Positions 8,190-45,600 of a stretch of DNA of 53,891 nt are shown piece after piece. The stretch spans positions 1-53,891 of the forward strand of contig FLMG01001958.1 in assembly GCA_900088475.1 (NCBI GenBank), in the 5' to 3' direction. Numbering within the stretch: position 1 is the stretch's first letter; every line of letters begins with the position of its first letter. The translations under genes were made by a program, and so were the position numbers. The stretch comes from Hyphochytrium catenoides (lineage: Eukaryota > Protista > Hyphochytriomycota). Under the pieces are notes generated by a model. That model saw only the letters and a list, made by a program, of their open reading frames with translations, made no database searches and was not told where the DNA came from.

Positions 8190-10794
8190 ATGTCATTGCT
8201 AGCTGCCAATCCGTTGCCCTTTGCAGAGCCTTTTGGCCAAGCGAGGAGGGATATGGATTTCCATGACACAGCCTTTGGCAACGCTCAGAAGAATCTTCGA
8301 GACCTAGGTAAGATTAATTGTTCAAAGTCTATCAGTATCTGGAAACTTATCGCGTCAAAGCTAACGCCATATTTGGGAATGCTTAGGCGAAGGACGTGAT
8401 CCTCCGTTATCACTGGCCTCCTATGCTTGCAAACAAGCCTTCGTGCCTCTCCATCGCATGAAGCACGAGCTCGTTAGTGAAAAGAGCTCCATTCGTGGTG
8501 GCTTGACTCGGGTTGCAGCTGCAGTAAAAGCTGTGGGCCAGGCATCTGGCTCCTTCATGACTTTTGTCGGTGAGAAGACCTCTGACCTTGGCCGCAAGAG
8601 TCTTACCTCTGAGCTGGGACGCAAGAGCCTCAAGCAAAAGGATTTGGACGCCGTCAAGGCCGCTAGTGTTCCGGCCCCCTTGGCTCCGTCTACTTCGCCC
8701 TCAGTGATCCCCGCTCCTCTATCGGCTATAACGACACCAACCCCAACTACCTCTATCCCTTCAACCACGCCAATTTCGGTGATCTCTACTCCTGCCCAGC
8801 TTCACGCTTCTAGACCCACTGTTGCCTCATCGGAAACGGAGGAGACGAAACCAGCTATCACTCAGGCAGACGAGCCAGTTAAAGTCACTCTTGTGGGTCC
8901 CAACACTGTCGACATGCACCAGCCTTTTGAAATCCATGCAGTGACCACAAAAAGCTCGATGAACCTGTCCGACGAGACTCTCAAGGGCGCCTCTTCCATG
9001 GGCGAGACCGTGCTAGGCTCGCTCACGGATACACTGAAGGTTGCGCCACAGGGCCAACTCAATTTTATCGTCTCTCTGCGTGGAGGCTTGAATGAGACCA
9101 CGGGGAAATCTAACCTCATTCTTCAGAGCCAGAAATGGTCTTGGGATTCGAGCAAGCCGATGAAGACTACTTCCTTCAAGTTCACCGCCCCCACACAGGC
9201 AGGCATCTACCGTGGTTGTCTCACTATTCTATACAAGGGCAATCAAGACAGTGAAGCTAAGGTAGCAGCAAACATGTACTTCCTGATGAAGGTGAAGAAG
9301 CCTAAGCGAAAGCACTGGTGGAACACGGTTTTCGACCGCTTCATTAACTCTACTACCGGTATCAATGTCGCTCATCCTGTCTTCCAGCGCAAGATCTCCT
9401 CTGTGACAAAGCTTGTAGCATCTATCACACCGTCCTCGTGGCTTCGCTCTGGCTCGGACCTCTCTGACAAGTACCGCATGCATGTTTTGGAGACTCTGTT
9501 GACCAAGTTGAAGAATGGCTCTAAAAACGAAATCCTTATTGCTGCCGTCGCTATCGCTGACCTGGCTCAGCATGACAATGTACGGTCTACCCTGGTTGAG
9601 TATGGCATGGTTGATCCCCTGGCGCGTCTCGTATATTTTGGTGAAGAAAGCACAAGAGCACAGGCGCGAGCAGCATTGGCAAACCTTGCATTTGGCAATC
9701 ACGCTTACACAGAGACGGTTCTTCTGGCAATGCGGCGAGCATTTCTCCTTGCTTCCTATCATTTTCTCGTCGGTCAGATGGCCAGCGGGTCTACCTCTGC
9801 CAACCAGGTGAGCGCCACCAACGCCGTGGCCCATCAGATGGGTACAGGTTACCGCTCCAATAACGCTGGAGACGGGCCAGAGAAGACTCGTGATGGCAAG
9901 TGGTGGTTTCCTCGTTTCAAGAGCAACTGGTTCGGAGACTTCAGATCCAAGAATCTCTACCGCTGCTGCGAGTGTGCTCTAAAGGGCGAGAGGCTCCAAC
10001 GGTGCAATCGCGCTGTCGGGAAGCATTGTGTGTGCGGGCAAGATCAATGGATTCAGGCCCGTGATGAAGAGGCCAGGGAGATGAAAATGAGACAAGAAGT
10101 CAGTCAGAGGTATGGAGGCATCCGTTATGAAGAGGCTATCGCTCTTGCGAAAGCAGAAAGTGAGCACGCCTTAAAGCGCAAATGGACAGAGCTCTCTCAT
10201 CATCTTTCAGCGGATGAGCCCTTGATGAAGAGACTCCATACTGTCGACTCTCCCACGGCAATCTCTGCAGTGGCCGATCTTCAAAACCTCTCGTCACTCA
10301 TTCAGCTTAGCAACTTGCGCGGGGCTCTGCTAGAGCAGCAGCTGCTTGGCGGGTTCAAGGTTGCTCAGATGCTACCACCATCAGCAGCATCTCTATTGAA
10401 CACACCTCTGGCTTTCCACTGCGATTCTCTGGGGACAGATGGTCTCGCGAACTCGAATGGCGAAAAGGTGATGCACGAGTCTCTTATATTGGAGTCTTCA
10501 TTGGATGACCTGCCGCTGAACCTTGAAGGGATTCCTCTCTTCGAGGACATTACTGATCTGGACCTGGACCACTTCGTATTCGCGGAGGACTTTGCACCTC
10601 TGTCAGATCAAGCAAAGACTGAAAATCACACGTTGGCTGGAGCTACTCTCTTTTTGGAAGAGCCCAGCGGGGAAGTGGATATCTTTGCGGTGAAGGAGGA
10701 CACCATCAAGGTCGACTCAGAACCTCAGCATCAAATCGAGCCCGTCCCTCTCAGCCTGCCAGATACATCTGCGCTATCAACTCAAACCGCTTAA
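8190..10794 (+). CDS. ~841 aa protein with Ig-like beta domain, ARM repeats, Cys-rich motif and acidic C-terminus
   Basis: Exons 8190-8307 (G|GTAAGA, phase 1) and 8387-10794 (CTAAC branch, CTTAG acceptor) join in frame with the 783-codon ORF. ARM-like segment: EYGMVDPLARLVYFGEESTRAQARAALANLA. Also FKFTAPTQAGIYRG and CCEC..C..HCVC. Alternative start at 8253. Confidence 0.85.
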
Positions 10795-19357: not shown

Positions 19358-22300
19358 ATGGAGCGGCACTGCGTCTGGGTGCCCGATAAGCGGGTAGCTT
19401 GGATTCAGGCTGAGGTGGTCTCAAGCATGGGGAGCTCTGTGGTGGTGGACATTGTCCAAGATGCTGAGGAGGTGATGAAGGGGAACTTTGAGCGGCCAGA
19501 AGAGTTAGAGCGGCGGACAGTTCTCGTCAATGCGGTTACCAAGTTGATTAGAACTCCAGGTAAAGTTCTCCCGTCGCTGACACTGCTTACGCTGCTTTAT
19601 GTTGACTAAATGGGCATCTGATTCTGGTGCTGACCTTCTCCATCGTCAATAGGGTCACCTGACGAAGCGAACTTTCTCCCCCTGGTGAATGGTACAATGG
19701 GTCATAGCGGTATTGAGGACATGAGAGATTTGACATACCTCCATGAACCAGCGCTGCTTGACAACCTACGGAGGCGTTTCTTCGCCGAACTCCCTTGTAA
19801 GAAATATTGTCAGAGAGCCGCACCTCTTTCTTTTGAAAGGTAGAACTTGCTCCCATCTCACCCCTTGGTTCTCTACGACCAGACACTTATGCCGGGGACG
19901 TGCTGATTAGCGTCAACCCATACAACTGGCTCGATATCTATGACGAATCGTACCAGAAGAAGTATATGGACGGGTATGACAATAAACCCCTCTCTCTTTC
20001 AGTTGTTGGAGACTACTGACAGGACTACTTTATAAGCGTTACGTCCGAGCATCGTTTTTCATTCCTTCGCTTCTAGCGGCATGACCAGAGAGCTGTAAAG
20101 CTCTTTACTCGTGTTGGCATCTCTCTCTTTCCTCTCTGCTGATTGACGTTGTCTAACTCTAGAAATAGGTCGGAGGAGCTGGCCCCACATCCTTATGCCA
20201 TCTCGGCTAGGGCGTACATGAATGCTATCGATAAGTGCAAAAACCAGACGATTCTTGTCAGTGGAGACTCGGGTGCAGGGAAGACGGAAATGGTCAAAAT
20301 GCTCATGGAACACCTGGCGTTTCTTTCTTCCTGCTCTGGAACTGCCCCTGCTGACGTCATGCACAGCAATGACACAGTCATAAGGGTGTTAGAGTCAAAC
20401 CCTCTCCTGGAGACCTTCGGCAACGCACTAACAACGCAGAATGATAACAGCAGCAGGTTTAGCAAATTTGTTCAGATGCAGTTTGACGCTTCCGGCCGCT
20501 TGCTGGGCTCCGTGACCTCAGTTTATCTTCTGGAGAAGAGTCGCGTGGTGCACCTGGATGGAGGAAACAAGAACTTTCATATCTTTTATCAAATCCTTAG
20601 TTTGCCAGTAGAGCAAAGGAAGCGCTACTATTTGGAACTTCGATTGGAGGACTATCAATACGTGGTGCCCCCAAAGGGGGCTATGGCAAAAGATCCCGAA
20701 CTCGCAGTGGAACCGACGTGCTTCGAAGACACGGTGAATGAACTCGAAGTAGTAGGCATCTCTGAGGAGGAACGGAGGCAGATCTTTGAATTGATCGCTG
20801 GCATTCTAAACACTGGTAACTTGGAGATCATTACCTCGCGGGAGAACTCCGAAGGGTCCGACATTGCAAGCAGAGATCAGCTTGCCATAGTGGCAACGCT
20901 GTTTGGCGTAACACCCGCGGAGCTAGCTTCCGTTCTCTGCACTCGTTCAATCACAGCCCGGGACGAAGAGTACTCGGTTCTACTACGTAGAGAACAGGCT
21001 ATTGACTGCCGAGATGGCCTAGCCAAGGCGGTGTACGAGCGGCTCTTTCTCTGGTTGGTAGATAGAATTAATCGGTCAACCGGAGGCTATTCTGCCTTTC
21101 TAGAAATTGGTCTTCTGGATATCTTTGGCTTCGAGTGTTTCGCACACAACTCTTTTGAGCAGCTGAACATCAACTACACGAATGAAAAGCTGCAGCAGAT
21201 TTTCATCGCCAACGTGGTAGAAAGCGTGCAAGAAGAGTATCTTGCAGAGGGGTTTCACTGGGCACCTCTGTCACCGCCGGATAATAGGGACGTTCTAGAG
21301 CTACTGGATGGAAAGCTCGGCATCTTCTCGATGCTCAACGAAGAATGTGTGCTGCCCCAGGGCAGCGACCAGTCATTTCTCAGCAAGCTCGTCAGCCGGC
21401 ATGGGAGCCATCCACGGCTCGTCCGACCGCCACCTAAGCAGGCCGGAAGCGTCTTCATTATCAAGCATTACGCAGGGGAAATTAAGTACACCGTAGGTGG
21501 CTTTTTAGAGAAGAACAAGGACACCCTAAACTCGACTGTCGTCTCTCTTCTTTCCAAGAGCAAATCGCCGGTTCTACGAAGCCTCTTCCGCCAATTTGAC
21601 TTCACATTGACAAAGAGAGCGTCTCCGAGAGGAGCCGGAACACCGGGAAGCAGGGCCTCTCCAAACAATAGGAAGCGAAACCTGTCCATGATAACGACTC
21701 CCACAGTCGCCCAGCAGTTTCAGGTGCAGTTATCGGAGTTGGTGCAAGGCATCACGAGCAGTGATATGAGCTACGTTCGCTGTCTCAAGCCAAACAAGCT
21801 TAAGAGCTCTTCAATATTTGATGGACTGACGGTAGTTCAGCAGCTCAGACTCTCAGGTAAGCCCACTTGAGATTGTACCAGGTTACTGGACAAAAGAGGC
21901 ACACTCCAAACAAGTTCATGTCCACCCTCATTAATTATCCGACGTCTATCATTGGCTGTGGCTCGGATCCCTTCTGCTTATTGGAGATCAATACTTAATG
22001 CCTTTTCCTCTGACCTGCCTTCTTTACCGCTTTTTCCTCTGGACTAGGCATCATTGAGGCGATCTACATTAGTCGATCGAAATTCTCTTCTAGAATGACC
22101 TTTGAGGACTTCTATAACCGCTTCCGCATCCTTGGACATGGTAATGGAGACAGAACCTCTGCAACAGGTGAGAAAGTTGCTTGAGATAGGTGCTAGTCGG
22201 AGAAGTTTTGAGAAAGACCACTCGGTGAAGCAGCGAGTGAAATGTAATTCTGTTTAAGGCTTGATTGGCGCCATGAAAGGATTGATTTGACTGCATCAGA

Positions 22301-25300
22301 TGAAGCAAGATCGATTTACATGCAGTCCACAGGGACAGGATTTGAAGCCGAGAACGCCATTCTTCTGGCTCAAGCTGTGTTGCCAGGTGGCGTGACATCG
22401 GAAGAGCAAGAAAGGATTCACAGCGACAGTGAGGTTTTCTATGTCATCGGAAAGACCAAGATATTCTTTCGGACCCATGTACTGGAGGAGCTTGAGCACA
22501 GGAGGCATGAGGTTAGATACGCGTTCATTGCTGCATTACGGTTGTTTGGGCATGGTACTCGACTCATACAAGACAGTAATGCCAGCTCGAAGGCAGTCTT
22601 CAAGCCATGTTCAGAAGTCTCATTTTTGACTTGTAGAGCTTGTTCTGATTTATATCCCCTTAATTTTCTCTAAGATGTCAACGTTCTAAGCCTATATTCC
22701 ACCAGCTTGTGGACAGGAATTCCCGTAGAATCCAGGCTTTCGTTCGCCGAGTAAGCGCGCGGAAACAGTTTTTGCAGTTGAGAGAGATGGTTAGAGTCAC
22801 TCAGGTGATGTTCAAGCTACGCATGAAACGGAAGCAGCGCAGAGCTTTGAGCCATAGCGCGGCCCTGATTCAGGCTACATATAGGGCCTATTGGCATAGA
22901 AGACGGTATCTTAAGCTACGAAGAGCCGTTCTTTGCCTTCAGGCACGTTACCTTCTCCTCCTAAGACGCTGGAGTGAACACCATTCCCAGACAAGTGCCA
23001 TCCTCATACAGTCCATCGTTCGGATGTTCTTAGCCCAGCGGGCAGCCGCCCGCTTGCGCCAGCAAAGAGCGTTCAATGTTGCTCGCACAAGGCTGCTCAC
23101 GGTGAAGAAGAATCGTTCTTCCCGTGTCATACAAAGATCATTTCGACGATATAGCTCAAGAAGGGCGATGCTTCCTGCCCTCTCCGCACTGGTTTTTCGA
23201 AGAAGGCAGTTCTCAGCCACAAAAATCCAGTACTGGTGGCGTCGCTACCGACAAGACGGTTCAAGAGAAACTCGGACACCAACTAACGTTTACCAATCTC
23301 CCAACGCTGTTGATGTGAGTGGCTCCCCGGATCGCAGTTCCACGAACAGCTTCCATAGTGCCCTATCTGCGTCCCCAGCCAGGACTCTGGGCTCCCCTAA
23401 TGTTATGCCGAAGGCTTCGAAGAAAGAGCCAACGCCATGGCCGACCAGCGTTGAACCAGAGGAAGAGAGTCCAGGGGTTACCCTTCCATCTGACTGGAAG
23501 GCCCTTAACAATGGTTACATGAGGCCCGGTGTGATAAGGAGCAAGACACCTACGTCCTTTGGAAGGGGGCGTGGCAGGAATGTGAAGGAGATGGTGAAGA
23601 ACGCAAAAGTGTTTGCTGTCAAAGACGATCCCATGGATGAGTATTATGCTAAGGACGAAGGTGAGAAAACATTCCCCAGGGCTGATCGGCAATCTGGATT
23701 CTTGACGCCTATATTCTTGAGCCACTGCCTAACCTCCTCTTACATCAACCTCGTTATTTTTTGCGCGTATGACTGATGTGGCCTTCCTTCTCGCCTTGTC
23801 GGTTGAGTCCTTTGGACTCGGGTTTGGCTGCTTTCTTATCTCTCATGGGGTCTGCCTTTTAATCTGCCTTTTAACGATGTTAGTTTGCTTCTTATTGTAC
23901 TCTCTTTTCCTTACTGACGCGCTACCGTACAATATGCAGTTGAGACACAAGCCAGCAAGCGGGATCTTATTCAGCGCCATGAAAAGAAACTGAGCCAGCA
24001 AATGACTGGGCCTGCCTATCAGATCCACAGGATGTTGGCTCGGACACTAAAGGCCACGCTAACAGTTCAAGCCTTCTGGAGAGGATACTTAGTGCGAAGG
24101 GTATACAAGGCACGAAGGGCGGCCATTATCAGAATTCAGGTACGTAGAGTGGCAGTGTCGGGATCTTTTAGAGGGAAAGGAACGTTACGAAGAGAGGAAG
24201 AAAGCCTATCCTTGATGATTTCCCGCTAGCCACGAGTCAAAAGGTCGACTTTTTGGTTCCATAGGGTTTTTCTTAGTGGACTGTCTCGAGACTTATCATT
24301 TCCACTCCCCTGCTTATCTCCACCGTAGTCGTTCGTGAGAATGTATCAGGCAGTGCGACTGGTGGACAGGCTCAGACTGTTTATGGGCCAGCCTGCGAAG
24401 TACAAGAGTATGTCCAATGAAACCCTAAGCATTACAGTGATGTTTGCTCTTTGAACCCTAGTTGCATGGCCGTAGCTCAACTGAACTAGATGCTGTTCTA
24501 ACCTTTGATCTACCCTGGCTGCACCATCCTGCCCTGACTCAAATTGCGAACAGATTTTGCTCGTATCCGTCTCCCTAGCAATGGCAAGATTAAGGAAGCC
24601 AGGGATCGCACAGAGAGCGGACCTAGGACCTCAGGTGGGAAAAGAGATGGACCAAGAACTAGCGGACCGAGGGTTAGAACCGGTAAGAGCGCTTGCCTTT
24701 TCTGTCGGGCACCTCCCGTTATTGCGCCGTGCCTTGAGAGGATAGTTGTGGTGTTATCGCAGCAGCGTCTTGTACTAAAATCTGACTCTTTGGCGTTGTA
24801 CATGTTTATAGACCCTAAGCTTCATGCCTCCAATTCTATTTCCTACAGCGCAAGCTTCGGCCTACTCCTTCCCAGATGAAGCGAGAACTGCAACCAGAAC
24901 CACTAGCGGCAAGCTCTCTCTTTCTCCCACAGCCAGCGCCGCCCTCCTTTCAACTTTTGCTCGCAGCACTCGGGGAACAGCGGCAACATCTTCGACAAGC
25001 GCGCTTTCTCCCTCCTCACAACAGAATTCCTCCCCTTCTTACCCCGATGTCAACAACGTGACACCTCCATATCCTGAACCTCAGCCCGGTTATACTGAGA
25101 GAGAAACAGAGTTTGTCTTGACTGCGGATGGACCCGTCAACATGAAGTATCAGAACCAGTTGCAGAATGAGATTCAGGACCAGATGACTGAGAGGGAGAC
25201 AGAATTCGACCTTACCGCTTTCGGTCCTGTCAAGGTCGTCATCACTATTCAGTCTTCTTCTTTGAGCAGCTTTTGTAGCATTCAGTGCTCTGCGCCTAAT

Positions 25301-27736
25301 CTCCCATCTCCCCAAACTTCTCCGTAGCTTATGGTTCTCTCTCATAATTTATCCGTAGAAGGTTCTTCTCGATTGCACTCGCCCTTGTCTCGTGTACGCC
25401 TAACAGCAGCTTCCTTCGTTTCAGGTTGAAAAATCACCTCGAACTGCCGCCAGCCCGCGCACTCAGGCGAAAACCGACAATATGATTAGGGAGGTAGACA
25501 TTGACAGCCACGTGAGTAACTTTGTGGTCCTTGGAGGAAGTAGCAAGGGAGTCTATGAAGGTAAGGGTGTCGATTTGTTAGATCCATGATAAGAGACGAT
25601 AGCTGGTAAGTTCCTGATGTTCTAATTTTACAGATATGAAGATGGATCCGCTACTGGCGCGTGCAGCTTTAGATACTGCGGCGTATGCGGCGGCTAAAGG
25701 CGGTGAAGGTTCCTCAGGTGGAAAGAAGAGTAAAGGCTGGCCACATACGCCATCTGAGCACAGAGGTGAGATAGAAAGTGCTAAGTGAATGACTTAACTG
25801 TGCTGAACTTTTGTGTTTACCTCTGTCAGGGACAAAGCATATGCGCTCGTTTGGCAGTACCGAGAGTGCGGGAAGCTCCTCCGGGTCACCTCGAGTGACC
25901 GGCTATGGCAGAAGTGAGACTGCAAGGACAGATCTTCTAAGGATACATTTTGAACAGGTCAGCTCCTAGCCTGCTTCCTGGTTCTCATTTAATAGCTTTC
26001 CATATTGCGGCTATCCGTGAAGTTCTATCGTAATCCCGAGCTTTGTCAAGCTGGCGGCTGACCTACTTTTGCTCTTCCCATTGCAGGGCGCAGACACTGC
26101 CTCTACAGTCCTTCGGGTCTCTGACAAGATGGACACTGTAACTGTGAGAGACATGGTAGCTAGGAAGAAGGGACTGTCGGATGAGGAGGCGAGCTACTTC
26201 AGCATCGTGCTCCTGATTACTGATGAGAAAGGTGAGACGCAGGGACATTACTTACACCAACCTTCTGCTTCCTAATGTCGTGCGCTCACTATTCTCTGGT
26301 CTAATCTTACCCATGCCTTCTTCAACGCCGCCTCCATATTAGGATCAGCTTAGCCAATGTTTCTCTTTGTCGCTCAATGCATGTGCCATCTTCACCATAG
26401 ACCCATATCTGACGTATTGCACCTTCCTCACCTCTGATACCAGGCACGATTATCGCTGTGAGGACCCTTCAGGACGATGAGCGGCCCCTGGAAGTGGCAG
26501 AAGAATATACGGAAAGCGTTGATATTGATGGCGATTCTGAGAAGAGAAAGAGTTCCAGAAAGAGTGGGAAGCCAGCTAGGATGAGAGTCAAGTTTATTTA
26601 TAAGGTAGAAGCCTTCTCTTTCACTAGTTCTGAGGCGCAAGCTTTTCGTTCTAGAAAGCCTTTAAAATTATGAGACGCCGATTCTTATTGTTCTTCCCGT
26701 TACCCTGGTCTGGTCGTTGACACGTCGTTCTGACTTTGTGAATTGCTCTAGGATGCCCGATCGGCACCTATTGCAGTTGCGAATATGAAGATTAACAAGC
26801 TTGCCAAGTCTGACGAGCCGGACTACTTTAGCCTGACACAGAAGCTTGGCAAGGTCAAACCCTAGCTCCTTCCTCCAAGCAAGCTCTCATACGCACATTA
26901 TTTGGTTTCCTGTTCCTTTCCGATGGTGATGGAATCAGCTGCGTCCTTTGGGATTTCCTGGCTACTCAATAAGGAATCCGAGTACCTCACAGTCTCTTGC
27001 TCTAGGGTGATAAATGTGGTTATTTAAGTAAAGTTAGTCAGAAGGAAAGGAATGTCATGCGACGGCGGTGGTTTGTCCTTAAGGTACGCGATGCCCGCCG
27101 TTGAATGCACTGCTCCTTTGACCCTTGTGAAGCCCGTGCCTTTACCAGTGCCGCCTCAAGGATTATTGTGTTCACTCTCTCATCACTACCTCTGTTTCCA
27201 GGACGACAAGCTATGGTACTGCAAGAATCATGAGAATACGCGTGATCTGAAGTTCATTAACCTCGTCGCGACAGAAATTCGTGAGAGGAGCACCTCGGTA
27301 ATTCAGCTTCCCCGATAGCTCGGCCATAGTCGCCCGTCACTCAATGCTTCTTGGCTGTCTTCTATGCAGGGTATGGCCTACAGTTTCGAAATTATCACCA
27401 GCGAACGTGCCTTCAAGGTAACGATAGTGGCCAACTTTTTTGACCAGAGTGAAAGTCGGGGGTGGATGCCTCACCCAGTCGCACAGGTCCTAACCCACTT
27501 CCCCTCTCTTCTCATTGCTCGACTCTGCTGTCCCCGGTCTCCCCTTTTCGTCCTGCTCTTTCTGTTGGTTTGTTGTTTTGTTTCCCTCTGCGCAGCTTGT
27601 GGCCAGCAGCCGATCCGAGATGCACCAATGGATGGAGGCAATCAGGAAGGCGAAAATTTTTGCGGACGAGAATGACTCAATGATCAGGGCGGACAAAAGC
27701 ATCAGGAAGCAAGTCAGGAAATTCTTTAGGCCATAG
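19358..27736 (+). CDS. Unconventional myosin heavy chain (SH3-like N-terminus, motor, ~9 IQ, low-complexity tail, C-terminal RA-PH), ~1780-1790 aa, 21 exons
   Basis: Exons 19358-19559, 19653-19796, 19883-19973, 20163-21856, 22048-22167, 22300-22511, 22706-23660, 23940-24139, 24329-24407, 24554-24682, 24876 (or 24849)-25234, 25425-25560, 25634-25765, 25830-25957, 26087-26231, 26444-26604, 26752-26853, 27006-27083, 27202-27297, 27370-27417, 27596-27736 form one open frame. Motifs: VWVPD, LHEPALL, SVNPY, GDSGAGKTE, NDNSSRF, LDIFGFE, NEKLQQ, YVRCLKPN, GKTKIFFR. The myosin call is secure; the tail fusion is inferred from splice phases. Confidence 0.9.
25094..25231 (+). repeat. Two copies of the coding motif TERETEFxLTAxGPV, 93 nt apart, in the myosin tail
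   Basis: Copies at 25094-25138 and 25187-25231; 13/15 aa identical. Confidence 0.9.
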
Positions 27737-27911
27737 TCAGTGGACGAAGGGCAACAATATTAGAGGGGCCGAAAAAAAATGTTTTGTTAGAGGCGAGAAT
27801 TAACTTATGGGATAGCTCAATAATAATTTATTACTTTCCATTTGAACCTAGTCATCCCTGTCTGATCTCTGACCGACGCCCTTCCTCAAGTCGCGCTTCT
27901 CTTGGCTACGC

Positions 27912-30900
27912 TTACTCCTCGTCTTCTTCTTCTCCCGACTCTTCGTCTGTTTGTTCGTATTCAAAGCTCTCATCTTCGTCGGTTTCCTCTTCATCTGGAT
28001 CCTTGCTCTCCTCCTCATCTTCGTCTCCGCCAGAATCCTCATCACTGCACTCACCAACCACCAGTCCTGGGCGGTCGAATGCAAGATGCGTCCCATACCT
28101 GGACCGAATGTACCTGTTGCACACGAAAAGCGGGGTTCCTATGAGCAGAGAACAAGTGGTGAAAGTGTTCAACTTTGCAATTGACTGCAGGTCTAAGTGA
28201 GAGCGAAGAGGTAGACGTGTAAGAATAAATAGAGATGTCCGTCGAAAGCAAAGGCACGAAGTGTAAAGCACCCAAGAGAGCCAAGACAGAGGGCAGAACA
28301 AGGGTAACAACGAACCCAGGAAGTAGTAGGAGGAGGGCGTACTCTATGTAATCCATCCCATCTACTCCATCCCAAGGGCGTCTATACCGCTTGAGATAAG
28401 CCGTCTCTCGGTGTTTGTGGAGAATCTGTAATCACAAGCACCACGCAGAGGCTCAGTCGGGCTTACATTAGCAGTAGGAGTAGTAGAGTCGAGGTGAATG
28501 ACGGGAAGAGACGGGTAAGCGTGGTTGACTTTGTCACGGCTCGAACGGAAGAAACATTTCATCCAGCTATAACAAACCAGCTGTTGGGAAGCCTGTATGG
28601 ATTTCAGTGAAGAACTAATAGACCTTTTCTTTAACAGCTTCTTCAGTGATCTCGCTGTACTTATCTACGATCATCTGCTTCCATTCCCGTTCACTCCAGT
28701 AGCTTTTTTGGAGACATTCGAGGTACGAGAGACGGGACAGAGCACATGCAGCTTTCATCTACACGGAGAGGACCCAGCCATAATGGGAACAGATTGGTGA
28801 GCAACAGGAATGTACATACGGCAGAGAGTCAAAGATCATAGGCATGGAGGTATTAGACTAAATTGATGCAGTAGAAGTATGCAGCGGTAGAGGTAGAATT
28901 GTTCCAGACAAGGGACGTAGCGGGACCACCCAGAGTAGTCAGAACCTGCTTTCCCTCATCTCACCTCTTCCATCTCACTCGGCATCACTCCGGGAGAGTC
29001 CAGCAGATCTCTCAATTTTTTCTTGTCCACTTCCATCTGCGATAGATAGGGTGATGGTAAGGAATGGCCCAGTGACCAACCCCACAGAATAGGTATAAAG
29101 AGAGATGAAGATTCCACAACACAGGGCCGATGTCGTGAGGCACAGTTTAGCGACCCTAGTAAGCACAAGAGCAGGGATGCTCCCTATCTATAATAACTAC
29201 TGACGGGCTCAGAAGGAGGTAGATGCAGAGTAGGAAGCAGGACATACCGCGTTTTGTAGCTGTGGAAGCTCAAGTTTGTGCTCCTCTTTTAACTCCAGAA
29301 CCTCCGACGTCAAGAGGGCCAGCCCTTCCATGGAAAGAGATGAACAGTATTGGAACTTTGAACACGGATCAATACTGGAGATGTCTTGTATACCTTCTTC
29401 TGTTTGAGCAAAGTAGCGCTGCGTCTCTCTCTTCGCTTCCTTCACTGCTTTCTCTGTTTCCTGCTGCTCGTCGAGGTACCGCGAGTGTTCATCGTCCCAG
29501 CAGATGACCTGATGCATCAACGGAGAGAGCGTGCCCAAAAAAGAGTGTTACAGAGTTGGCTATATGAGAACAACAAACCCAAGCATAAGCCCTAGGCAAA
29601 CAAGGGAGAGCATGAGGTCGTCCCGGAGAGCATGTGAGCGACAAGGGATGGCCCTACGACAGGCACCTTCTGCAAAACCCATGCGTTTTTTAATCTGGTG
29701 CGCATAAAGAGAATGCGGTCCTTGGAGGTTCCGACGGTCCGTCGCTCCCAGGGCCCAAGGTACCTATCAAGAGCATCCTCAACTTGCCGCCTAGTGAGAG
29801 GATCAAAGGGTACGACTAAGAAGGCGCCAAGGACTAGTACCAGCACTGTGAGGCCATAAGCTATCTGGCCACGTTGTTTAAAGCGTTAAATCAGGTTTCC
29901 CGAGACATAGAGGAAGACTTCCCACTTCAAATGGAGCTTGTTCGAGTGGTAGGTGAGCTATTACCTATGCGCTGTCTCTCACCTTGTGTACGGAAACTGG
30001 ACCCGTGTTCGTCCTCTAAAGATTCTCTCTCTCAAGTGCTCCAATAGAGGTTTCCTTCCTTTCGGGCGCGGCCCCCACAATGCGCTAGGCAAAATCCCAT
30101 AACAGGAGCACATTTGCCCGCCTACAAGCGAAAAAAGTTGGAAAGACGAGGGGTCGAGCCGCCATAACACAATATTAACCATACATCCTAGGCTATCATT
30201 TCCAATGGAGAGGCAAGAGACAGTGGTGCAAGAAGGTCCTCTCAATAGAAACAATTTCCCCATACCTGGGCCCCATGGCCTTTGCACATCGTCATTTAGC
30301 TCTGCCTCAGTAATCCATCTTGAGTATCGCGCGAGCTTGATGAGATCGTACAGACTCTGTAGAACACGCCTGCGGTATTCCTGAGCGCACCGAATGCGAT
30401 CTTCCAAGAAACTATTTATGATGTCTATGCCCCTGGAGATAAATGAAGTCGAAGGAGCACACGGTTAGGTGCGAATAACAGCAGTAAAGCCACTAACATG
30501 AAGAACTGAACTGGGACTGAAGGCCAGCAGTATCTCTTGATTAACAGCATTCGTGCTCCAGTCTCAGAAGCGTGAGGGGCCCTCCTTGAGCAGTCATATC
30601 GGCTTTCAAGCTAAGTGTCTCCCTTCTCACCCATACAACGGCTGCCTGTACCCAGTGGCAGACGACATTTCCAATCTACCCACATTTTCTCCACAATGGG
30701 TCATGTTCCTCTTGCGGAAGCCTGTCTTTGACTCGGCCCGGCTATATCCTTACCTCTGATGATGGTAAAAGAAGTACCCATTTATATATCGGTCGACGGC
30801 ATTATCGAAGGCTACAAGAGTCTCTTTGTCCTGAACAAAAAAGTTGTCTCCACCCTCGAACTCTTCCACCACCAGTAGGTCCTTTGTGGTAGGGGACAGT

Positions 30901-33900: not shown

Positions 33901-36900
33901 AGTATGGCGAGATCTTACTTGAGTTGCCGGTTCCGAAAGTCAAACATTATTGCCTAAGAAGGGAAACAGCTACTTAGATACCCCACGGAGGAAAGGAAGC
34001 GCGAAGGAAGAGACACAGCAAGTTGGACGGACGAGAACTAGAGAGGCATCCTGGAGATTGGATGAATCATGGAAAAAACGGGTAAAGGACGATCCCGATC
34101 CCGTGGAGTGGGCGGCATACCTCCACCCCTTGGTCTAGAACACCCTGAGACGGATTTTCCAACTGCAGGTTATTGGCAAGCCGAACAGTCTTCAAGGCCT
34201 TCAACTTCACAAACGAGTCAGGCAACGTGCGTAAATCGTTGCTGCTAAGATCTAGGAAGCTGAGGGAGGCAAGCTCCCCAACACTTGGAGGGAGGGTCTG
34301 AAGGCGGTTTTCCCGAAGATTAAGGCTACATAACGACATAGGTAATGGATAGGACCAATGACGTGGTCACGTATGAGCAAGCAACCTTGCATCTTTTGAG
34401 AGCAAGCTGGCCAATTTGAACAACGTGCCAAAGGCTAAATCACTATCAGAAATCTGGACTTTGAATAGCAGCTGCACCACGGCTTGTGAAACGCTAAAAA
34501 GGTAGTTCGAAGTGGTAAGACACTTAGTTATTTGGAGACGTCAGCACTCGAGTAACAGATCTTCACGAAGACAGGCTCTAGGACGGTGAACCAGGCTATG
34601 GAGACGGCTAGGTAACCTTTCAAGTCTGGCGAGACAACCCACTTCATCTGGTAAAGCCACCAAGTGATTTCCTCCTAGCAAAAGAGAGCTGATAGCCTTC
34701 AGATGACAAAGTGACGGGGGCAGGGCATACAAACGGTTGTATTCCACCTCCAACGTCTTTAGATGCCTCAGACTCCCCTAGAAAAGGTCATTTACATGGG
34801 GCGAAGTGCAGTGTCAAAAAAATGGCAAGCTTGAGCTGTGTCGAAGGAGAGAGATAGAGAGTAACAGAAGCCGGAGAGTTATGGCGGTCGTGACATGACC
34901 AGAGCCTTAGCAAAAAGGAAACAGAGAGATTCATAGTCCTGTTGAATTGACAAGTAGGAGTGAGGGAGGAGTCATACAATGCTCTCCGGCAAGGATATAA
35001 GGTCGTTCCTGCTAGCGTTCAAATACGTTAAGCTATCAAGCTCTCCGATACGGTCCAGCTCTGGGGGCAGGCTGAGAGGCAGATGCCAGAGTTCAGTGGG
35101 AGCAAGGCACTCTCAAATCCGAAGAGCTAGCCCCATTGAGAGGAAAGATAAAACGAAGAACTAGCGAAAATGGAAGAGTGGGAGTGGTTGAGGACCATAA
35201 AGGACACACGAACAGGAGAGAGAAGATGGATCTGAAGCGAAGGGGAAGAAGAAGGGAGAACGTAGAAGCAGCTTCGAAGGCATTTCCACTTCCACCTTAG
35301 TAACGCTTCTCCGGTTGTCATGTTTCTATATACCGGCTTCCCTTCTTCGCTGTTGACTTCCCATCTGATGGCGCTTGCCTTCTGCTTGTTCAGTACAAAG
35401 AAGAGAGAGTCAGCCAAAGAAGGAGATGACGCCATGGAAGGGCAGAGACCTTGCGACGAGCGGCAAACAAGACCGCTGCTAGTTAAGGATGGACACCGAG
35501 AAAGGTAAGCGCACCGAGAGTAAGTCTACTGAAATTGGAACCAAAGCGATGAGCAAAAAGTATGACCCCTTTTGGTCTGAGAAGGAGGTTAGCACCTTTT
35601 CTTCGTTTCCTCCAGTGTTTGGGTCCGAAGATGGAGGCGGGGATCGTCGGATCTCTTTTGTCCAAACATTGTAGTACACTTTCTGTCCGTTTTCGTCTGT
35701 CATTTCTTGCCAATGATGATTCGCCACCCTTGTGCTCTCAGAACTCTGGAGGCTGTGTCCGTCCTCAGAGCGTTCTTTGTTTAATAGGGGACTATCCCCT
35801 TCCCTCTCTTTCACATCCATCACGGACCCGACCGGCAGAGTACAGAGAGAAATAAGTTTGTTCTGACTCACGTCTAAGCAGGTGAGCGCTACGTAACGGT
35901 GGATGCCTGCAGAGTTAAGGACATTGTGCCGAGCGTTAAGGCCTAAGACCTAAAGCCAGAGAGTGCACAGGGCCAAAGAATAACAGCGATGCAACTAAAA
36001 GAACAGATGATGGCTACGTCTCTAGAGACGGTAGAGAGTCCAGCCAGGGAGGAAGAGCCAAGAAGAGGAGAATAGGATAAGGTGAAGGTCCCGCAACTCC
36101 GTGACCGAAGAGGGTGGTTGCACTGTAGGAAACGCCCGAGTACCTAGAGGAAGAGTCACCAATTGATTGGCAGACAGATTGAGCTCCGTAAGGGACTTCA
36201 ACCCGGACCAGGCAGGGACCTCCTTCAGCCTATTGCACTGAAGCTTGACAATGCATAGCGAAGGTGGTAGCTGCTCAACCGTAACCAATTCGTTGTTGGA
36301 GACATCCAGTGTTTGCAGCCATCTGAGCCTATAGGAAAAATAAAAATTAAACGAGGACGTTAGACAGGACGGCGCGAGGAGGGAAGTGGAAAGAGTTAGG
36401 AAGCACGAGGGATAAAGCCAATAGCGACGAGGGCCAAGAAGAGGAAGCAGGGAGTCGGAGACTAATACTGACTGAAAAAGGAAGAGTGCTTCTCTGTTTT
36501 TGCTAGGCCATAACAGACAGAAAAAAGTGAGCTTTCTCCTCTTCGAAGAAGTGAGTGTCACGTCACCTTTGTATCTGGGAATGTAGTTGCTTCAACTTAT
36601 TGGCACTAACGTTCAAAATGCGAAGGGCTGGGAAGTGGTAAAAGAGTTCTCCCGGGAGCTCTGTGAGGAAGTTCTCTTGGGCAGCCAACTCCGAGAGAAA
36701 AGGAGAGATCTGTTTGGCGATGATGCTGTCAGCTCGCAGCCGGGTTGATTGGTAACCGCCGGAAAGAGAAGAAGGGGGAAGAAGAGAGAGCAGATGACCA
36801 TGGGACTGACCTGAACGAACAGCGTCCGAAAGAGCTGCCGTGGAAAAGTAAACAGTCCCAAGGAGGTCAGAACCAACTTGCCCGAGGACAAAGAAGAGTA

Positions 36901-42690: not shown

Positions 42691-45600
42691 CTAGCCCAGT
42701 CGGGCAGGTAGAGGTAAATCGTAAGACTCCTTGTCTGATCCTTGTGAGGAAGGAGTTGGTAAATCCTCACTCTTTTGCTCCATGGTGGGAGGACAAATGA
42801 AAAGCGTGCGGACTAAGTCTTCCCCTTCTTGCGACTTCTCTTCGCACCGTATATCCGCACTTTGCGAGCAACGACTCTGTGCCCTATCTTGACATTCTCT
42901 CCGCTTGGAGTACCAATGGAGGATATTCCTAGGGAGGAGGATTTTTTAAGCACCATACAATGGTGGGCGCAAAGAAAGCAAATTAACGCGACGGCGAGGG
43001 CAATGCCTCGACGGACGAGATGGTCGTTCACCCTTCTCCATACGCCTGGAGTCAAAGAGGCCTAGACTAGAAGAAAGCCCACCAATCACGCCAGCTTGGC
43101 CATACCTTTGGATCACCAAGGAGGCCTGCAACTGCCTTTTCATCTGCTTAAAATGCTTTCTTTCTAGCACCCCTCTAGTGGCCGCTTGGAACTTAATGGT
43201 GGCGTGACGCGTGTGGAGGAAGTTTTTGCGAGCGAGCATTGAGCGTGTTGCGGCCTGGACAGTGACCACAGCTCTGGACATGAAGCAAGTGAGTGAGAAC
43301 GCGCAAAGAAACAAGGAAGAATAAGGTATCGACAGAGTGAAAGCGACAACATGACTGGGACCTAAACCGTGGAACGGTGTGCAAGTTCAACCACCTTGAG
43401 TATTGTCTAGTTAGCAAAGACGTAAACACGGAACTACTAAAAGCAAGAAGCACATTAAAGGAAGCTTGGGTTATCCGTACTCCGGACGCTAGAGAGTCAA
43501 AGTAAAAAGAGAGAAGCCGAAGTGGTAACACACCGTTCAAAATCCATCATATTCTGTTCCTGCGCGAGAATATTCCTGGTGGTGGCCTGCAGCTTGGTTG
43601 TCGCCTCTCGCATTGTCTTATAGTTTCTCCGTAGTAACCACGCCCTGACAGTGCATCGAGCTCAACAAGTGAGAAAAGGAAGAACAGGAGCCTCGCGGTT
43701 GTCTAAACTGCAAATTGACGCGAGACATTGAGTGCTAATAGCAAAAGGAGACCTGACAAGCCCTCTACCACTTTGGAAGATAAGACCAGGTGAAAGGATA
43801 ATGAAGTCCACACCTAACGTTATGCTGTATGATACGAGCCTCCTCCTCAAGTTTTTGGAGCTCTTCCGGACCCATGAGCTTCATGGCAGCGGTCAAATCT
43901 GTCATTGACCCATCCTCTTTGTCCGTTGCTATGACACTAGAGGCCATCTTAGGTGTGAGAAGGAGAGCAACCTCAAGGTGTAGGAAGGGATAATCGTAAA
44001 AAGGAGAAACCGTAGCTTTACGGCTTTACAATGTGAGAAACATAGTCGACACCTAAAAGGAGGGACAGTTCACGTTTTCCGAGAGGGAAGGAAGCAGCTG
44101 CGGATGGGGACCTCCCACTATCACTTACCTCACAATATCAGCCTCACACAGTTCAGAACCGGCATCACTGAATATATCATTGGCGTTCTCCAGCTTCGTA
44201 TCTCCATTGTTGCACCCATCTCGCGCTATGCCCAGTCCAAGAGACAGTGCGCACTTGTCATGCAAGCTCATCATTGAAAAAGCCTCAAGAAGCAGCTGGC
44301 GGTTGTAGTTTTTGGTATCAGGAGTTCCAGCTGAAGAGTTTTTATTATCAGCTCCAGGGATCCCAGAGAATCTTGGTACGCAACCAGAGCTGGATGACTG
44401 TCGAGACTATATCGAGAATGGAGAGAGTCGGTGGGCCGCACAGACCACGAGAAGGGGAACATTCCACAGCTACCTTATCCAGTCCCTCATCGGAATATAC
44501 AACAGTAGGATCGTTTGTGCCGCTTTCTCGCTGCTGGCTGGAAAGGAACCGCGGTACAGTTTGAGGCCCAGCTTCCCGCCAAGTCCTAAGAAAATAAGTC
44601 AGAGTGAACTCTATTTAAAAACTGTGACCGGTGAAGGTGCAGACTGCAGCGATAGTATAAACAGGAGAATGACTCTAAAGGACGGACGCGAGGAGCATCA
44701 ATCTCTGCCCTGACCACGTAAACTTATGGCGTTCTTGAGATGGCAAGGGTTGCAGAGTGGCAGCAGAAGGAATAGCAGACAAGGCACACAGCAGTAGAGG
44801 GTAGCTCAGCTTGGAAGTAGTCGGCAAGGCAACCTTGTCAGGTGACATACTACTAAGAATGTGGCGATTTACCTCGGGCTTAATACCCATGGGAACTTTT
44901 TAAGGATCTGATGTTTCATCGGAGACGAAGAGACCCACGACTCTGAATCAATAAACCTTTCAGGAGTGGAGGGTAGCGCTTCATCAATCCGGCTTAAACC
45001 TGACGGGGACGAAGAAGAAGACGATCCATAGCTCTCTTGGGCGCCGTCATAGAGGCGGCGGGAGGCTGGCGACGGCCTTAGGGTACGTGGCCTTAGCCAC
45101 GAAAAGATCTCCCGCTCATTGTTTATAGCAGCTCTATGGAAAGAGGAATAGAAAGTATGTGAGATCCCAGATAGCGAGGTAGAGGTAGAAGCAGAAAATG
45201 ACCTGAGAATGAACATCAAATTGAAAAGCACAAATAGGCAAGACATGCTATTGAATCAAACCACTTTGAGAATGCCGCGACTGGTAGAAAACCCACGAGA
45301 GACAAGCAGTACCTATCAGCAGCGGTCAACCCATCTGCGTCTTCCATGTTAGGGTCTGCCCCATCAGCCATTAGCTGCTTGACAATATCGAGATGTCCAC
45401 TGCCCGCAGCCTGCATAATGTGTCAGCAATCAGGGTCAGTCACTAGTAATAGACCAATGGAGAGCGACCAGGTCGTGATTGATGACCCCGATGAAAGCCA
45501 AACGTGGAGACCTGACGCTGACATAGCAGGAGAGATTACGCTTACGTGTAGCAAGCTATAGCGCGCATTATGGTATCTACTGAACTAAGGCTGAAAACCA

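What the first reader, a model, noticed from the sequence alone, without database searches (positions are those of the whole stretch)
19358..27736. Myosin with a C-terminal RA-PH module: candidate new myosin architecture
Seen: an unbroken phase-consistent GT-AG chain from motor through IQs and tail into RA (VRTLQDDERPLEVAEE..VKFIYK) and PH (CGYLSK..WFVLK..FEIITSERAFKL..MHQWMEAI), with no intergenic gap. Known: myosin IX has an N-terminal RA domain, and myosin X has PH plus MyTH4-FERM. I do not know of a described class with an MRL/Grb7-type RA-PH tail. Inference: a motor recruited to membranes by coincidence of an active Ras-family GTPase and phosphoinositides.
Basis: partly seen in the sequence, partly recalled or inferred. 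Interest (0 to 1): 0.9.

Follow-up and report, generated by a model that had tools for sequence, protein, structure and literature searches.

The report
Myosin motor with RA-PH tail
A soil protist's genome carries what is most likely a single 21-exon gene joining a myosin motor to a Ras-association plus PH (lipid-binding) module; I found no description of this tail, but no RNA yet spans the join between the two halves.

Summary
From ATG 19358 to the stop at 27734-27736 there is a + strand chain of 21 exons and 20 GT-AG introns. It encodes an SH3-like N-domain, a motor with intact ATPase motifs, about 7 IQ motifs, a Ser/Pro-rich stretch, 2 more IQ motifs, a roughly 300-aa low-complexity linker, an RA domain and a C-terminal PH domain (about 1,780-1,795 aa).

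- **Splicing:** spliced contigs of a related organism confirm seven junctions.
- **Reading frame:** all 17 exonic differences listed for near-identical DNA assemblies fall on third codon positions.
- **Weak link:** exon 9 (from 24329) has no good donor and runs into an in-frame TGA at 24452 if left unspliced. No RNA covers 24086-25132.
- **Why one gene is still favoured:** the next exon (to 24682) encodes GPRTSG twice with five synonymous codon changes, in a frame that has no ATG. Its donor ranks second of 415 decoy GT sites. The strain differences in 24415-24445 look non-coding.

I put one gene at about 0.75-0.8.

The motor is a long, deep branch among heterokont myosins with PX, WW or Tub tails, so a new class is not shown. 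None of 150 related motors or 80 metagenome myosin contigs has this tail, and no paper I could search describes it. Function is inferred only.

The parts
19358..19559 (+). Exon 1: start codon and Myosin_N SH3-like domain
   Evidence: Pfam PF02736 E 2.9e-07; donor CAG|GTAAAG with a 93-nt intron
19653..19796 (+). Exon 2: start of the motor
   Evidence: tblastn of related myosins; model
19883..19973 (+). Exon 3: motor
   Evidence: tblastn; spacing fits the consensus of 40 relatives
20169..21856 (+). Exon 4: core of the motor, with P-loop GDSGAGKT, switch I NDNSSRF and switch II DIFGFE
   Evidence: Pfam Myosin_head E 3.2e-161; motifs found
22048..22167 (+). Exon 5: motor (converter region)
   Evidence: Model; donor CAG|GTGAGA
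22300..22511 (+). Exon 6: end of the motor
   Evidence: Its 3' junction (intron 22512-22705) is confirmed by an X6 spliced contig
22706..23660 (+). Exon 7: about 7 IQ motifs, then a Ser/Pro-rich low-complexity stretch
   Evidence: Pfam IQ E 1.6e-10; IQ positions; both flanking junctions seen in X6
23940..24139 (+). Exon 8: second IQ cluster (first motif)
   Evidence: X6 contig joins 23660 to 23940; strong donor CAG|GTACGT at 24140
24329..24441 (+). Exon 9: completes an IQ motif across the junction. Its 3' end is unresolved (24399, 24407 or 24441), and an in-frame TGA at 24452 follows if it is left unspliced
   Evidence: IQ continuity; weak donors; X5 variants 24415, 24426 and an insertion after 24442
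24579..24682 (+). Exon 10 (alternative start 24554): bridging exon read in frame 1, with GPRTSG twice. The cryptic in-frame donor at 24635 would remove 16 aa
   Evidence: Peptide repeat with 5 synonymous codon changes; donors 24683 and 24635 are the two best of 415 decoy GT sites; no X5 variants
24849..25234 (+). Exon 11: Ser/Thr/Pro-rich linker with a TERETEF..GPV motif twice
   Evidence: 3' junction confirmed by X6; SNP 25177 is synonymous; ERETEF repeat
25425..25560 (+). Exon 12: linker, with SPRT twice
   Evidence: 5' junction confirmed by X6; SNPs 25478 and 25487 are synonymous
25634..25765 (+). Exon 13: linker. It contains ATG 25636, which is internal and not a start
   Evidence: Flanked by frame-preserving 73-nt and 64-nt introns with strong signals
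25830..25957 (+). Exon 14: linker, probably including the first strand of the RA domain
   Evidence: 3' junction confirmed by X6
26087..26231 (+). Exon 15: RA domain, N-terminal half
   Evidence: Pfam RA E 0.013-0.052, profile positions 12-61; the ten best Atlas family hits are all RA or its clan, top score 0.90; both junctions seen in X6
26444..26604 (+). Exon 16: RA domain, C-terminal half, with a charged insert
   Evidence: 5' junction confirmed by X6; SNP 26487 is synonymous; no family hit on its own
26752..26853 (+). Exon 17: 34-aa linker between RA and PH
   Evidence: Canonical splice sites; X5 variants cluster in the flanking intron and not here
27006..27083 (+). Exon 18: PH strands 1-2 with a basic K...RRR motif
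   Evidence: Pfam PH profile positions 3-26; SNP 27077 is synonymous
27202..27297 (+). Exon 19: PH middle strands
   Evidence: Pfam PH profile positions 17-58 on the ORF that contains it; 3' junction seen in X6
27370..27417 (+). Exon 20: PH strands
   Evidence: Both junctions confirmed by X6
27596..27736 (+). Exon 21: PH C-terminal helix, a 28-aa tail and the stop at 27734-27736
   Evidence: Pfam PH profile positions 85-103; the X6 contig runs through the stop; the spliced PH matches myosin X PH domains at i-E 3.4e-07

Best explanation
This is one protein-coding gene of 21 exons (19358-27736, + strand) for an unconventional myosin of about 1,780-1,795 aa.

**Shown**
- An SH3-like N-domain and a motor with intact P-loop, switch I and switch II.
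- A neck of about 7 IQ motifs, a Ser/Pro-rich spacer, and 2 further IQ motifs.
- A low-complexity linker of about 300 aa.
- An RA (ubiquitin-like, Ras-association) domain, then a PH domain 36 aa later, 28 aa from the C-terminus.

**Inferred**
- The motor walks on actin, and the IQ necks carry calmodulin-like light chains.
- The PH domain has the basic strand 1-2 motif typical of phosphoinositide binders.
- The RA domain binds a GTP-loaded Ras/Rap-like GTPase.
- The tail therefore attaches the motor to membrane patches where both signals coincide.
- The weak donor of exon 9, with an in-frame stop just behind it, may also allow a short, tail-less isoform.
For: **Domains**
- Pfam on single exons gives Myosin_N, Myosin_head (E 3.2e-161) and IQ. 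It gives RA at E 0.013, and three colinear PH pieces at 14.0, 16.2 and 16.2 bits.
- The spliced PH matches myosin X PH domains at i-E 3.4e-07 among 150 sequences.
- The first RA exon's ten best Atlas family hits are all RA or its clan, top score 0.90 with 182 shared features.
- Catalytic motifs are present.

**Gene model**
- Seven junctions come from a relative's spliced contigs, on both sides of the disputed gap.
- 17 of 17 listed exonic strain SNPs are third-position changes, 15 of them synonymous. All listed indels lie outside my exons.

**Continuity across 24400-24848**
- GPRTSG occurs twice in frame 1 (24619 and 24649). Five of six codons differ and all the differences are synonymous; DNA identity is 11 of 18.
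- Only three such repeats (four or more synonymous codon differences) exist in six frames of the 54-kb window. The other two lie in coding exons or ORFs.
- Frame 1 is open over 24538-24682 without any ATG. An independent start would need a 1-3 codon first exon.
- Donor 24683 is the second best of 415 decoy GT sites. It is frame-compatible with the strong acceptor at 24848.
- X5 differs at 24415, at 24426 (second position, Leu to Pro) and by an inserted T after 24442. That is unlike every confirmed exon and like the introns.
- A PRT motif recurs in exon 12.
Against: - No RNA covers 24086-25132, so no transcript links the two halves. I found no RNA run of the organism itself.
- Exon 9 has no AG|GT donor. 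Its frame-compatible donors score -1.0 to 1.5 bits, against a median of about 7 for the others. Left unspliced, it ends at TGA 24452 and gives a 1,245-aa myosin.
- Codon statistics stay mildly positive up to about 24441.
- An ATG at 24581 with a good context opens frame 2 of exon 10. It could be spliced in frame from 24635 or 24683 to an acceptor at 24811 that has a CTGAC branch site at -26.
- Genes are close here: a convergent ORF ends 176 nt past the stop.
- RA is below Pfam's threshold on single exons, and its second half has no hit.
- No homologue with this tail was found anywhere. Function is untested.
Confidence: 0.7

Rival explanations
1. There are two tandem genes. The myosin ends at TGA 24452 (1,245 aa, no cargo domain). 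A separate RA-PH adaptor gene starts at ATG 24581 (frame 2) and is spliced from 24635 or 24683 to 24811, then on into the same downstream exons.
For: - Exon 9 lacks a good donor and has an in-frame stop.
- ATG 24581 has G at -3 and G at +4, and frame 2 is open there.
- Acceptor 24811 scores 4.6 bits and has CTGAC at -26, like the confirmed introns.
- Genes are close here, 176 nt stop to stop on the other side.
- About half of the 40 nearest myosins have no recognised tail domain.
Against: - The GPRTSG repeat with synonymous codon changes marks frame 1, not frame 2, as translated. It also spans donor 24635.
- The 3'UTR, poly(A) site, promoter and 5'UTR would all have to fit into 126 nt that look like intron, with CTAAC and CTGAC motifs and strongly negative coding scores.
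- The last 13 codons of the myosin would carry a Leu-to-Pro change and a frameshift between strains whose other exons show only third-position changes.
Confidence: 0.1
2. There are two tandem genes, and the RA-PH gene starts unspliced at ATG 24824 (a 527-aa product).
For: The frame-2 ORF 24812-25234 contains this ATG, and the model is the simplest to draw.
Against: - The ATG has a poor context and sits inside the pyrimidine tract of a strong acceptor at 24848.
- An upstream ATG at 24802 opens an overlapping short ORF.
- It leaves unexplained the two best decoy donors, the exon-like island at 24579-24682 (about 4 SD above intron windows) and the GPRTSG signature.
Confidence: 0.04
3. The two units overlap. 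An internal promoter in or before exon 9 gives a motor-less RA-PH protein starting at a Met of exon 9, while myosin transcripts retain the next intron and stop at 24452. The fused protein is absent or minor.
For: Exon 9 holds several in-frame ATGs. A weak donor followed by a stop suits regulated or alternative processing.
Against: There is no evidence for an internal promoter. It needs more assumptions than one gene. The relative's contigs have similar low depth (2.5-3.3) over both halves, which is weak evidence.
Confidence: 0.06

Closest known systems
Heterokont/haptophyte myosins with lineage-specific membrane-binding tails (classes XXI, XXX and XXXI of Sebe-Pedros et al. 2014, PMC3942036; XXX-XXXIV of Odronitz and Kollmar 2007, PMC2375034)
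   Same: The nearest motors (up to 46% identity) have IQ necks and PX, WW or Tub tails. Class XXX has an N-terminal SH3-like domain, IQ motifs and a C-terminal PX domain, or a PH domain in Ectocarpus. The logic is the same: a motor plus a lipid-binding end.
   Different: The motor here is a long basal branch (0.97 against a median of 0.46). No RA domain is reported in these classes, nor found in the 40 nearest motors. This protein also has a second IQ cluster after a disordered spacer and a roughly 300-aa linker.
Grb7/10/14 and MRL proteins (RIAM, lamellipodin, MIG-10): the RA-PH tandem
   Same: The order is RA then PH, about 36 aa apart (from my own knowledge, the mammalian modules are spaced similarly). 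The PH domain has a basic strand 1-2 motif.
   Different: There is no BPS-SH2 (Grb) and no proline-rich Ena/VASP- or profilin-binding C-terminus (MRL); the protein ends 28 aa after the PH domain. No sequence match to them was obtained. Here the module sits on a motor.
Myosin X
   Same: It is a myosin with PH domains. The best sequence matches of this PH domain among 150 motors are myosin X PH domains. Myosin X also has an RA-like F1 lobe.
   Different: Myosin X has the order PH, MyTH4, RA-like/FERM. This protein has no MyTH4 or FERM_M domain and a single PH, and its motor is not in the myosin X group.
Myosin IX
   Same: It is a myosin with an RA domain.
   Different: In myosin IX the RA domain is N-terminal and the tail is C1 plus RhoGAP. 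It is restricted to metazoans and filastereans.
PHLPP and ARAP proteins (RA next to PH)
   Same: The top Atlas hit of the first RA exon is a PHLPP RA cluster. From my own knowledge, these proteins also carry an RA-PH pair.
   Different: There is no LRR/PP2C and no ArfGAP/RhoGAP here. The resemblance rests on one 48-aa exon.

Membership tests
Myosin superfamily | Motor domain matching Myosin_head above threshold | tested here: met
   538 bits, E 3.2e-161 on one exon
Myosin superfamily | P-loop GxSGxGKT, switch I NxNSSRF and switch II DxxGFE | tested here: met
   GDSGAGKT, NDNSSRF and DIFGFE are present
Myosin superfamily | Actin-activated ATPase and motility | not testable with these tools
   Needs protein biochemistry
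Heterokont class XXI/XXX myosins (Sebe-Pedros 2014) | Motor groups with the class in a phylogeny with labelled references | tested here: inconclusive
   FastTree of 118 motors places it as a basal long branch in a 54-row clade (support 100) that includes PX- and WW-tailed members. No class-labelled references were available
Heterokont class XXI/XXX myosins (Sebe-Pedros 2014) | Tail with PX, WW, Tub or a C-terminal PH domain | tested here: met
   A C-terminal PH domain is present. The RA domain is additional
PH domain | Match to the PH profile above the gathering score (25.1 bits) | tested here: inconclusive
   Three colinear exon pieces score 14.0, 16.2 and 16.2 bits at profile positions 3-26, 17-58 and 85-103. 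The spliced domain matches PH domains of myosin X at i-E 3.4e-07. A Pfam scan of the spliced sequence was not possible by reference
RA domain | Match to the RA profile above the gathering score (21 bits) | tested here: inconclusive
   16.5 bits, E 0.013, for profile positions 12-61 on one exon. The ten best Atlas family hits are all RA or its clan. The second half gave no hit
RA domain | Binds a GTP-loaded Ras-family GTPase | not testable with these tools
   Needs a binding assay
Grb7/10/14 | RA-PH followed by BPS and SH2 | tested here: not met
   The ORF stops 28 aa after the PH domain, and no SH2 was found in any exon
MRL (RIAM/lamellipodin) | RA-PH followed by a proline-rich region with Ena/VASP and profilin sites | tested here: not met
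   There is no sequence after the PH domain. The proline-rich stretches lie upstream in the linker
Myosin IX | N-terminal RA, with a C1 and RhoGAP tail | tested here: not met
   The RA domain is C-terminal, and no C1 or RhoGAP was found
Myosin X | PH domains followed by MyTH4-FERM | tested here: not met
   No MyTH4 or FERM_M was found in any exon

The most novel reading that the evidence does not exclude
A motor protein carries its own Ras/Rap-plus-phosphoinositide coincidence detector. In animals this job is split between RA-PH adaptors such as lamellipodin and myosin X acting together at actin protrusions. Here the two would have been fused independently in a stramenopile lineage, so that small-GTPase signalling is read directly by a myosin.
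Probability: 0.3. Interest if true: 0.6.

Novelty: new variant of a known kind. Interest (0 to 1): 0.45.

Why it matters
Myosin tails decide where a motor works. Heterokonts are known for inventing tails, but I found no report of an RA-PH pair on a myosin. If the fusion is real, it gives a compact natural example of a motor gated by a small GTPase together with membrane lipids. It would also be a case of convergence with the animal lamellipodin and myosin X partnership. The claim is directly testable with one RT-PCR and simple binding assays. It is seen in one lineage only (this organism and a close relative), so its reach is limited.

Tried and rejected
- **RNA evidence.** Two run searches found no RNA run of the organism itself. 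The soil metatranscriptome X1 laid nothing on 21800-27790. Only five short contigs of the relative (X6) were usable.
- **Homologue searches.** Searches with the RA exon ORF and the linker ORF returned only the same locus from the soil assembly. The tool's length window excludes long relatives of short queries.
- **Metagenome scans.** The scan with the linker exon found nothing. The scan with the motor gave 80 myosin contigs of at most 41% identity, none with a similar RA-PH.
- **Solved structures.** Exon-wise searches were uninformative.
- **My first gene-finder model.** It skipped exon 13, the first PH exon and a confirmed donor, and I corrected it by hand.
- **Direct splice 24408 to 24848.** This 441-nt intron is frame-compatible but would skip the exon with the coding signature, so I rejected it.
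- **Separate start at ATG 25636.** Rejected, because this ATG is internal to a well-defined exon.
- **SNP density.** On its own it did not separate exons from introns under my first model (0.63% against 0.74%, counted by hand). Codon position and indels did.
- **Left out.** I did not run Pfam, solved-structure or structure-prediction steps on the spliced RA-PH or on the full protein. A spliced sequence has no reference, and long letters may not be typed.


Full report
**What is there.** The window looks like nuclear DNA of a stramenopile-like protist. GC content is about 49%, and earlier notes of the scan on the same genome say the same. On the + strand, Pfam recognises:
- a Myosin_N SH3-like domain at 19358-19609;
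- Myosin_head in a single 575-codon open stretch at 20143-21867 (E 3.2e-161);
- IQ motifs in 22709-23776.

Weak but colinear RA and PH signals lie in short open stretches between 26069 and 27736.

**Gene model.** I built the exon chain in three steps: a codon-usage and splice-site dynamic programme, inspection of the sequence, and reads. The model has 21 exons and 20 GT-AG introns of 64-279 nt, with donors mostly AG|GT and a CTGAC or CTAAC branch motif 9-31 nt before most acceptors. The protein is 1,779-1,793 aa, depending on one junction. It has, in order:
- P-loop GDSGAGKT, switch I NDNSSRF and switch II DIFGFE in the motor;
- about 7 IQ motifs;
- a Ser/Pro-rich spacer;
- two further IQ motifs, one of which is completed across the 24139|24329 junction;
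- a low-complexity linker;
- RA at about residues 1512-1625;
- a 34-aa connecting exon;
- PH at about residues 1660-1755, followed by a 28-aa end.

**Independent support for the model.** Run X6, from a related organism at 90-99% identity, holds spliced contigs. These confirm seven introns on the + strand, in intron coordinates:

| Intron | Length (nt) |
|---|---|
| 22512-22705 | 194 |
| 23661-23939 | 279 |
| 25235-25424 | 190 |
| 25958-26086 | 129 |
| 26232-26443 | 212 |
| 27298-27369 | 72 |
| 27418-27595 | 178 |

One contig runs through the stop codon. These junctions lie in the neck and tail of the myosin, in the linker, in RA and in PH. Transcribed, spliced exons therefore exist on both sides of the doubtful region.

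Two DNA assemblies of nearly identical strains differ from the window at 31 and 14 listed sites. These are X5 (a soil metagenome contig) and X2. All 17 differences that fall in my exons are at third codon positions, and 15 of them are synonymous. All listed insertions and deletions lie outside my exons. This fixes the reading frames, including those of linker exons 11 and 12.

A separate start near 25640 is not supported. ATG 25636 lies two bases inside an exon (25634-25765). That exon is preceded by a 73-nt intron (AAG|GTAAGG ... TTTTACAG) and followed by a 64-nt intron (GAG|GTGAGA ... CTCTGTCAG). Together they carry the frame from the X6-confirmed exon 12 into the X6-confirmed exon 14.

**The weak link.** Exon 9 starts at 24329 after a good acceptor. 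It has no AG|GT donor, and if it is not spliced the frame ends at TGA 24452, giving a myosin of 1,245 aa. No read of any run covers 24086-25132 as RNA. Many frame-compatible GT-AG pairs can be drawn across this gap, so a 'phase-consistent chain' alone proves nothing here. I therefore looked for evidence that does not depend on my choice of splice sites.

1. *Splice signals.* Among 415 GT sites of the locus that are not model donors, the two best-scoring ones are 24635 and 24683, both inside the gap. The segment 24579-24682 scores about 4 SD above intron windows in an exon-versus-intron codon measure. Its flanks are strongly negative. So the gap contains an exon.
2. *Coding signature.* In frame 1 of that exon the hexapeptide GPRTSG occurs twice (codons from 24619 and from 24649). 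Five of the six codons differ, every difference is synonymous, and one is a TCA/AGC serine switch. DNA identity is only 11 of 18. A six-frame scan of the whole 54-kb window finds only three peptide repeats of this kind (four or more synonymous codon differences). The other two lie in a long ORF (8587) and in the confirmed exon 11 (25097). This is the mark of selection on a peptide, so frame 1 is translated across both copies. The exon therefore runs to donor 24683 (CCG|GTAAGA), which is frame-compatible with the strong acceptor at 24848 and exon 11. A similar PRT motif recurs in exon 12.
3. *No start codon.* Frame 1 is open only from 24538 and has no ATG before 24682. An independent start would need a first coding exon of one to three codons with a poor donor. 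The frame must therefore come from upstream, and the only coding exon there is exon 9 of the myosin.
4. *Strain variation.* X5 differs from the window at 24415, at 24426 (second codon position, Leu to Pro) and by an inserted T after 24442. That is three changes in 31 nt, including a frameshift, whereas every confirmed exon shows only third-position changes. This fits an intron that begins at 24400 or 24408. It fits coding sequence running to 24452 poorly.

The exact junction stays open. The candidates are:
- 24400 to 24578;
- 24408 to 24553, which has a GTATGT donor and CTGAC 17 nt before the acceptor;
- 24442 to 24578.

**Counter-evidence.**
- The candidate donors score -1.0 to 1.5 bits, against a median near 7 for the rest. 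One X6-confirmed donor (27298) is just as weak.
- Codon scores in frame 2 remain mildly positive to about 24441.
- ATG 24581, in a good context, opens frame 2 of the same exon. It could be spliced in frame to an acceptor at 24811, giving a stand-alone RA-PH gene.
- Genes are close here: a convergent ORF ends 176 nt beyond the stop.

Weighing these, I put one gene at about 0.75-0.8 and the various two-gene readings at about 0.2 together. The weak donor followed by a stop would also suit a regulated choice between a tail-less and a full-length isoform.

**What the tail is.**
- *PH.* The spliced PH region matches PH domains of myosin X representatives at i-E 3.4e-07 in a search of 150 sequences. 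Three exon pieces match consecutive parts of the Pfam PH profile. Strands 1-2 carry a Lys, then Arg-Arg-Arg before Trp-Phe. From general knowledge of PH domains, this is the pattern of phosphoinositide binders.
- *RA.* The first RA exon matches Pfam RA below threshold (16.5 bits). In the protein-language-model Atlas its ten best family hits are all RA or its clan. The top hit is a PHLPP RA cluster at 0.90 with 182 shared features. The second RA exon, which has a charged insert, gives nothing on its own. RA is thus probable, not proven.
- *Not done.* I could not scan or fold the spliced domains, because a spliced sequence has no reference.

**Relatives and novelty.**
- *Motor relatives.* The best of 1.84 billion representatives is only about 44% identical over the big exon. 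In the tree alignment the highest identity is 46%. The 40 nearest have IQ, WW, Tub, PX, and in one case Ank-PH-Ank-Aida_C2 tails, and no RA.
- *Tree.* In a FastTree of 118 motors the window's motor is a long basal branch of a well-supported 54-row clade that holds the PX- and WW-tailed proteins. That makes it a divergent member or neighbour of the heterokont group that Sebe-Pedros et al. call XXI/XXX. Those authors note diverse tails there and a C-terminal PH in Ectocarpus. A new class is not shown.
- *Tail relatives.* None of the 150 motors and none of 80 metagenomic myosin contigs carries a similar RA-PH.
- *Literature.* The texts of the two large surveys, their held supplements and two further full-text searches give no myosin with RA followed by PH. 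Their figures could not be read, so I cannot rule out that a domain drawing shows it.
- *Conservation.* The related organism B expresses both halves of the locus with the same junctions.

**Verdict.** The fusion is likely but rests on one junction without RNA. The tail combination appears undescribed, but it is a new variant within a group known for tail invention. The proposed coincidence-detection mechanism is a sensible but untested inference.

Noticed in passing
window 24635 and 24683: Two strong donors lie 48 nt apart, which is in frame, at the end of exon 10. Using 24635 would drop 16 aa, including the second GPRTSG copy, so this is a possible alternative 5' splice site.
   Followed up: partly
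window 25085-25234: Exon 11 encodes a motif of about 15 aa (TERETEF.LTA.GPV) twice, 31 codons apart, with synonymous codon differences. It may be a conserved short linear motif in an otherwise low-complexity linker.
   Followed up: partly
window 42949-43386 (- strand): An ORF with IQ-like repeats matches the necks of several myosins by tblastn (for example E 7e-07 at 43105-43287). It may belong to another IQ-motif gene.
   Followed up: no
window 27912-28310 (- strand): A convergent ORF with a very acidic Asp/Glu-rich C-terminus ends only 176 nt from the myosin stop codon. An AT-rich stretch between them could serve both 3' ends.
   Followed up: no
window 34067-34339 and 35127-35871 (- strand): ORFs with leucine-rich-repeat-like and WW-like peptide patterns suggest a multi-exon signalling gene on the minus strand.
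   Followed up: no
window 23667-27237: A soil metagenome run (X5) holds contigs about 99% identical to the window at word depths of 59-117, so this organism or a very close strain was abundant in that soil sample.
   Followed up: no
window 8365-10791 (+ strand): An 809-codon open frame carries an LGRKSL peptide repeat with synonymous codon differences. I used it only as a coding control.
   Followed up: no
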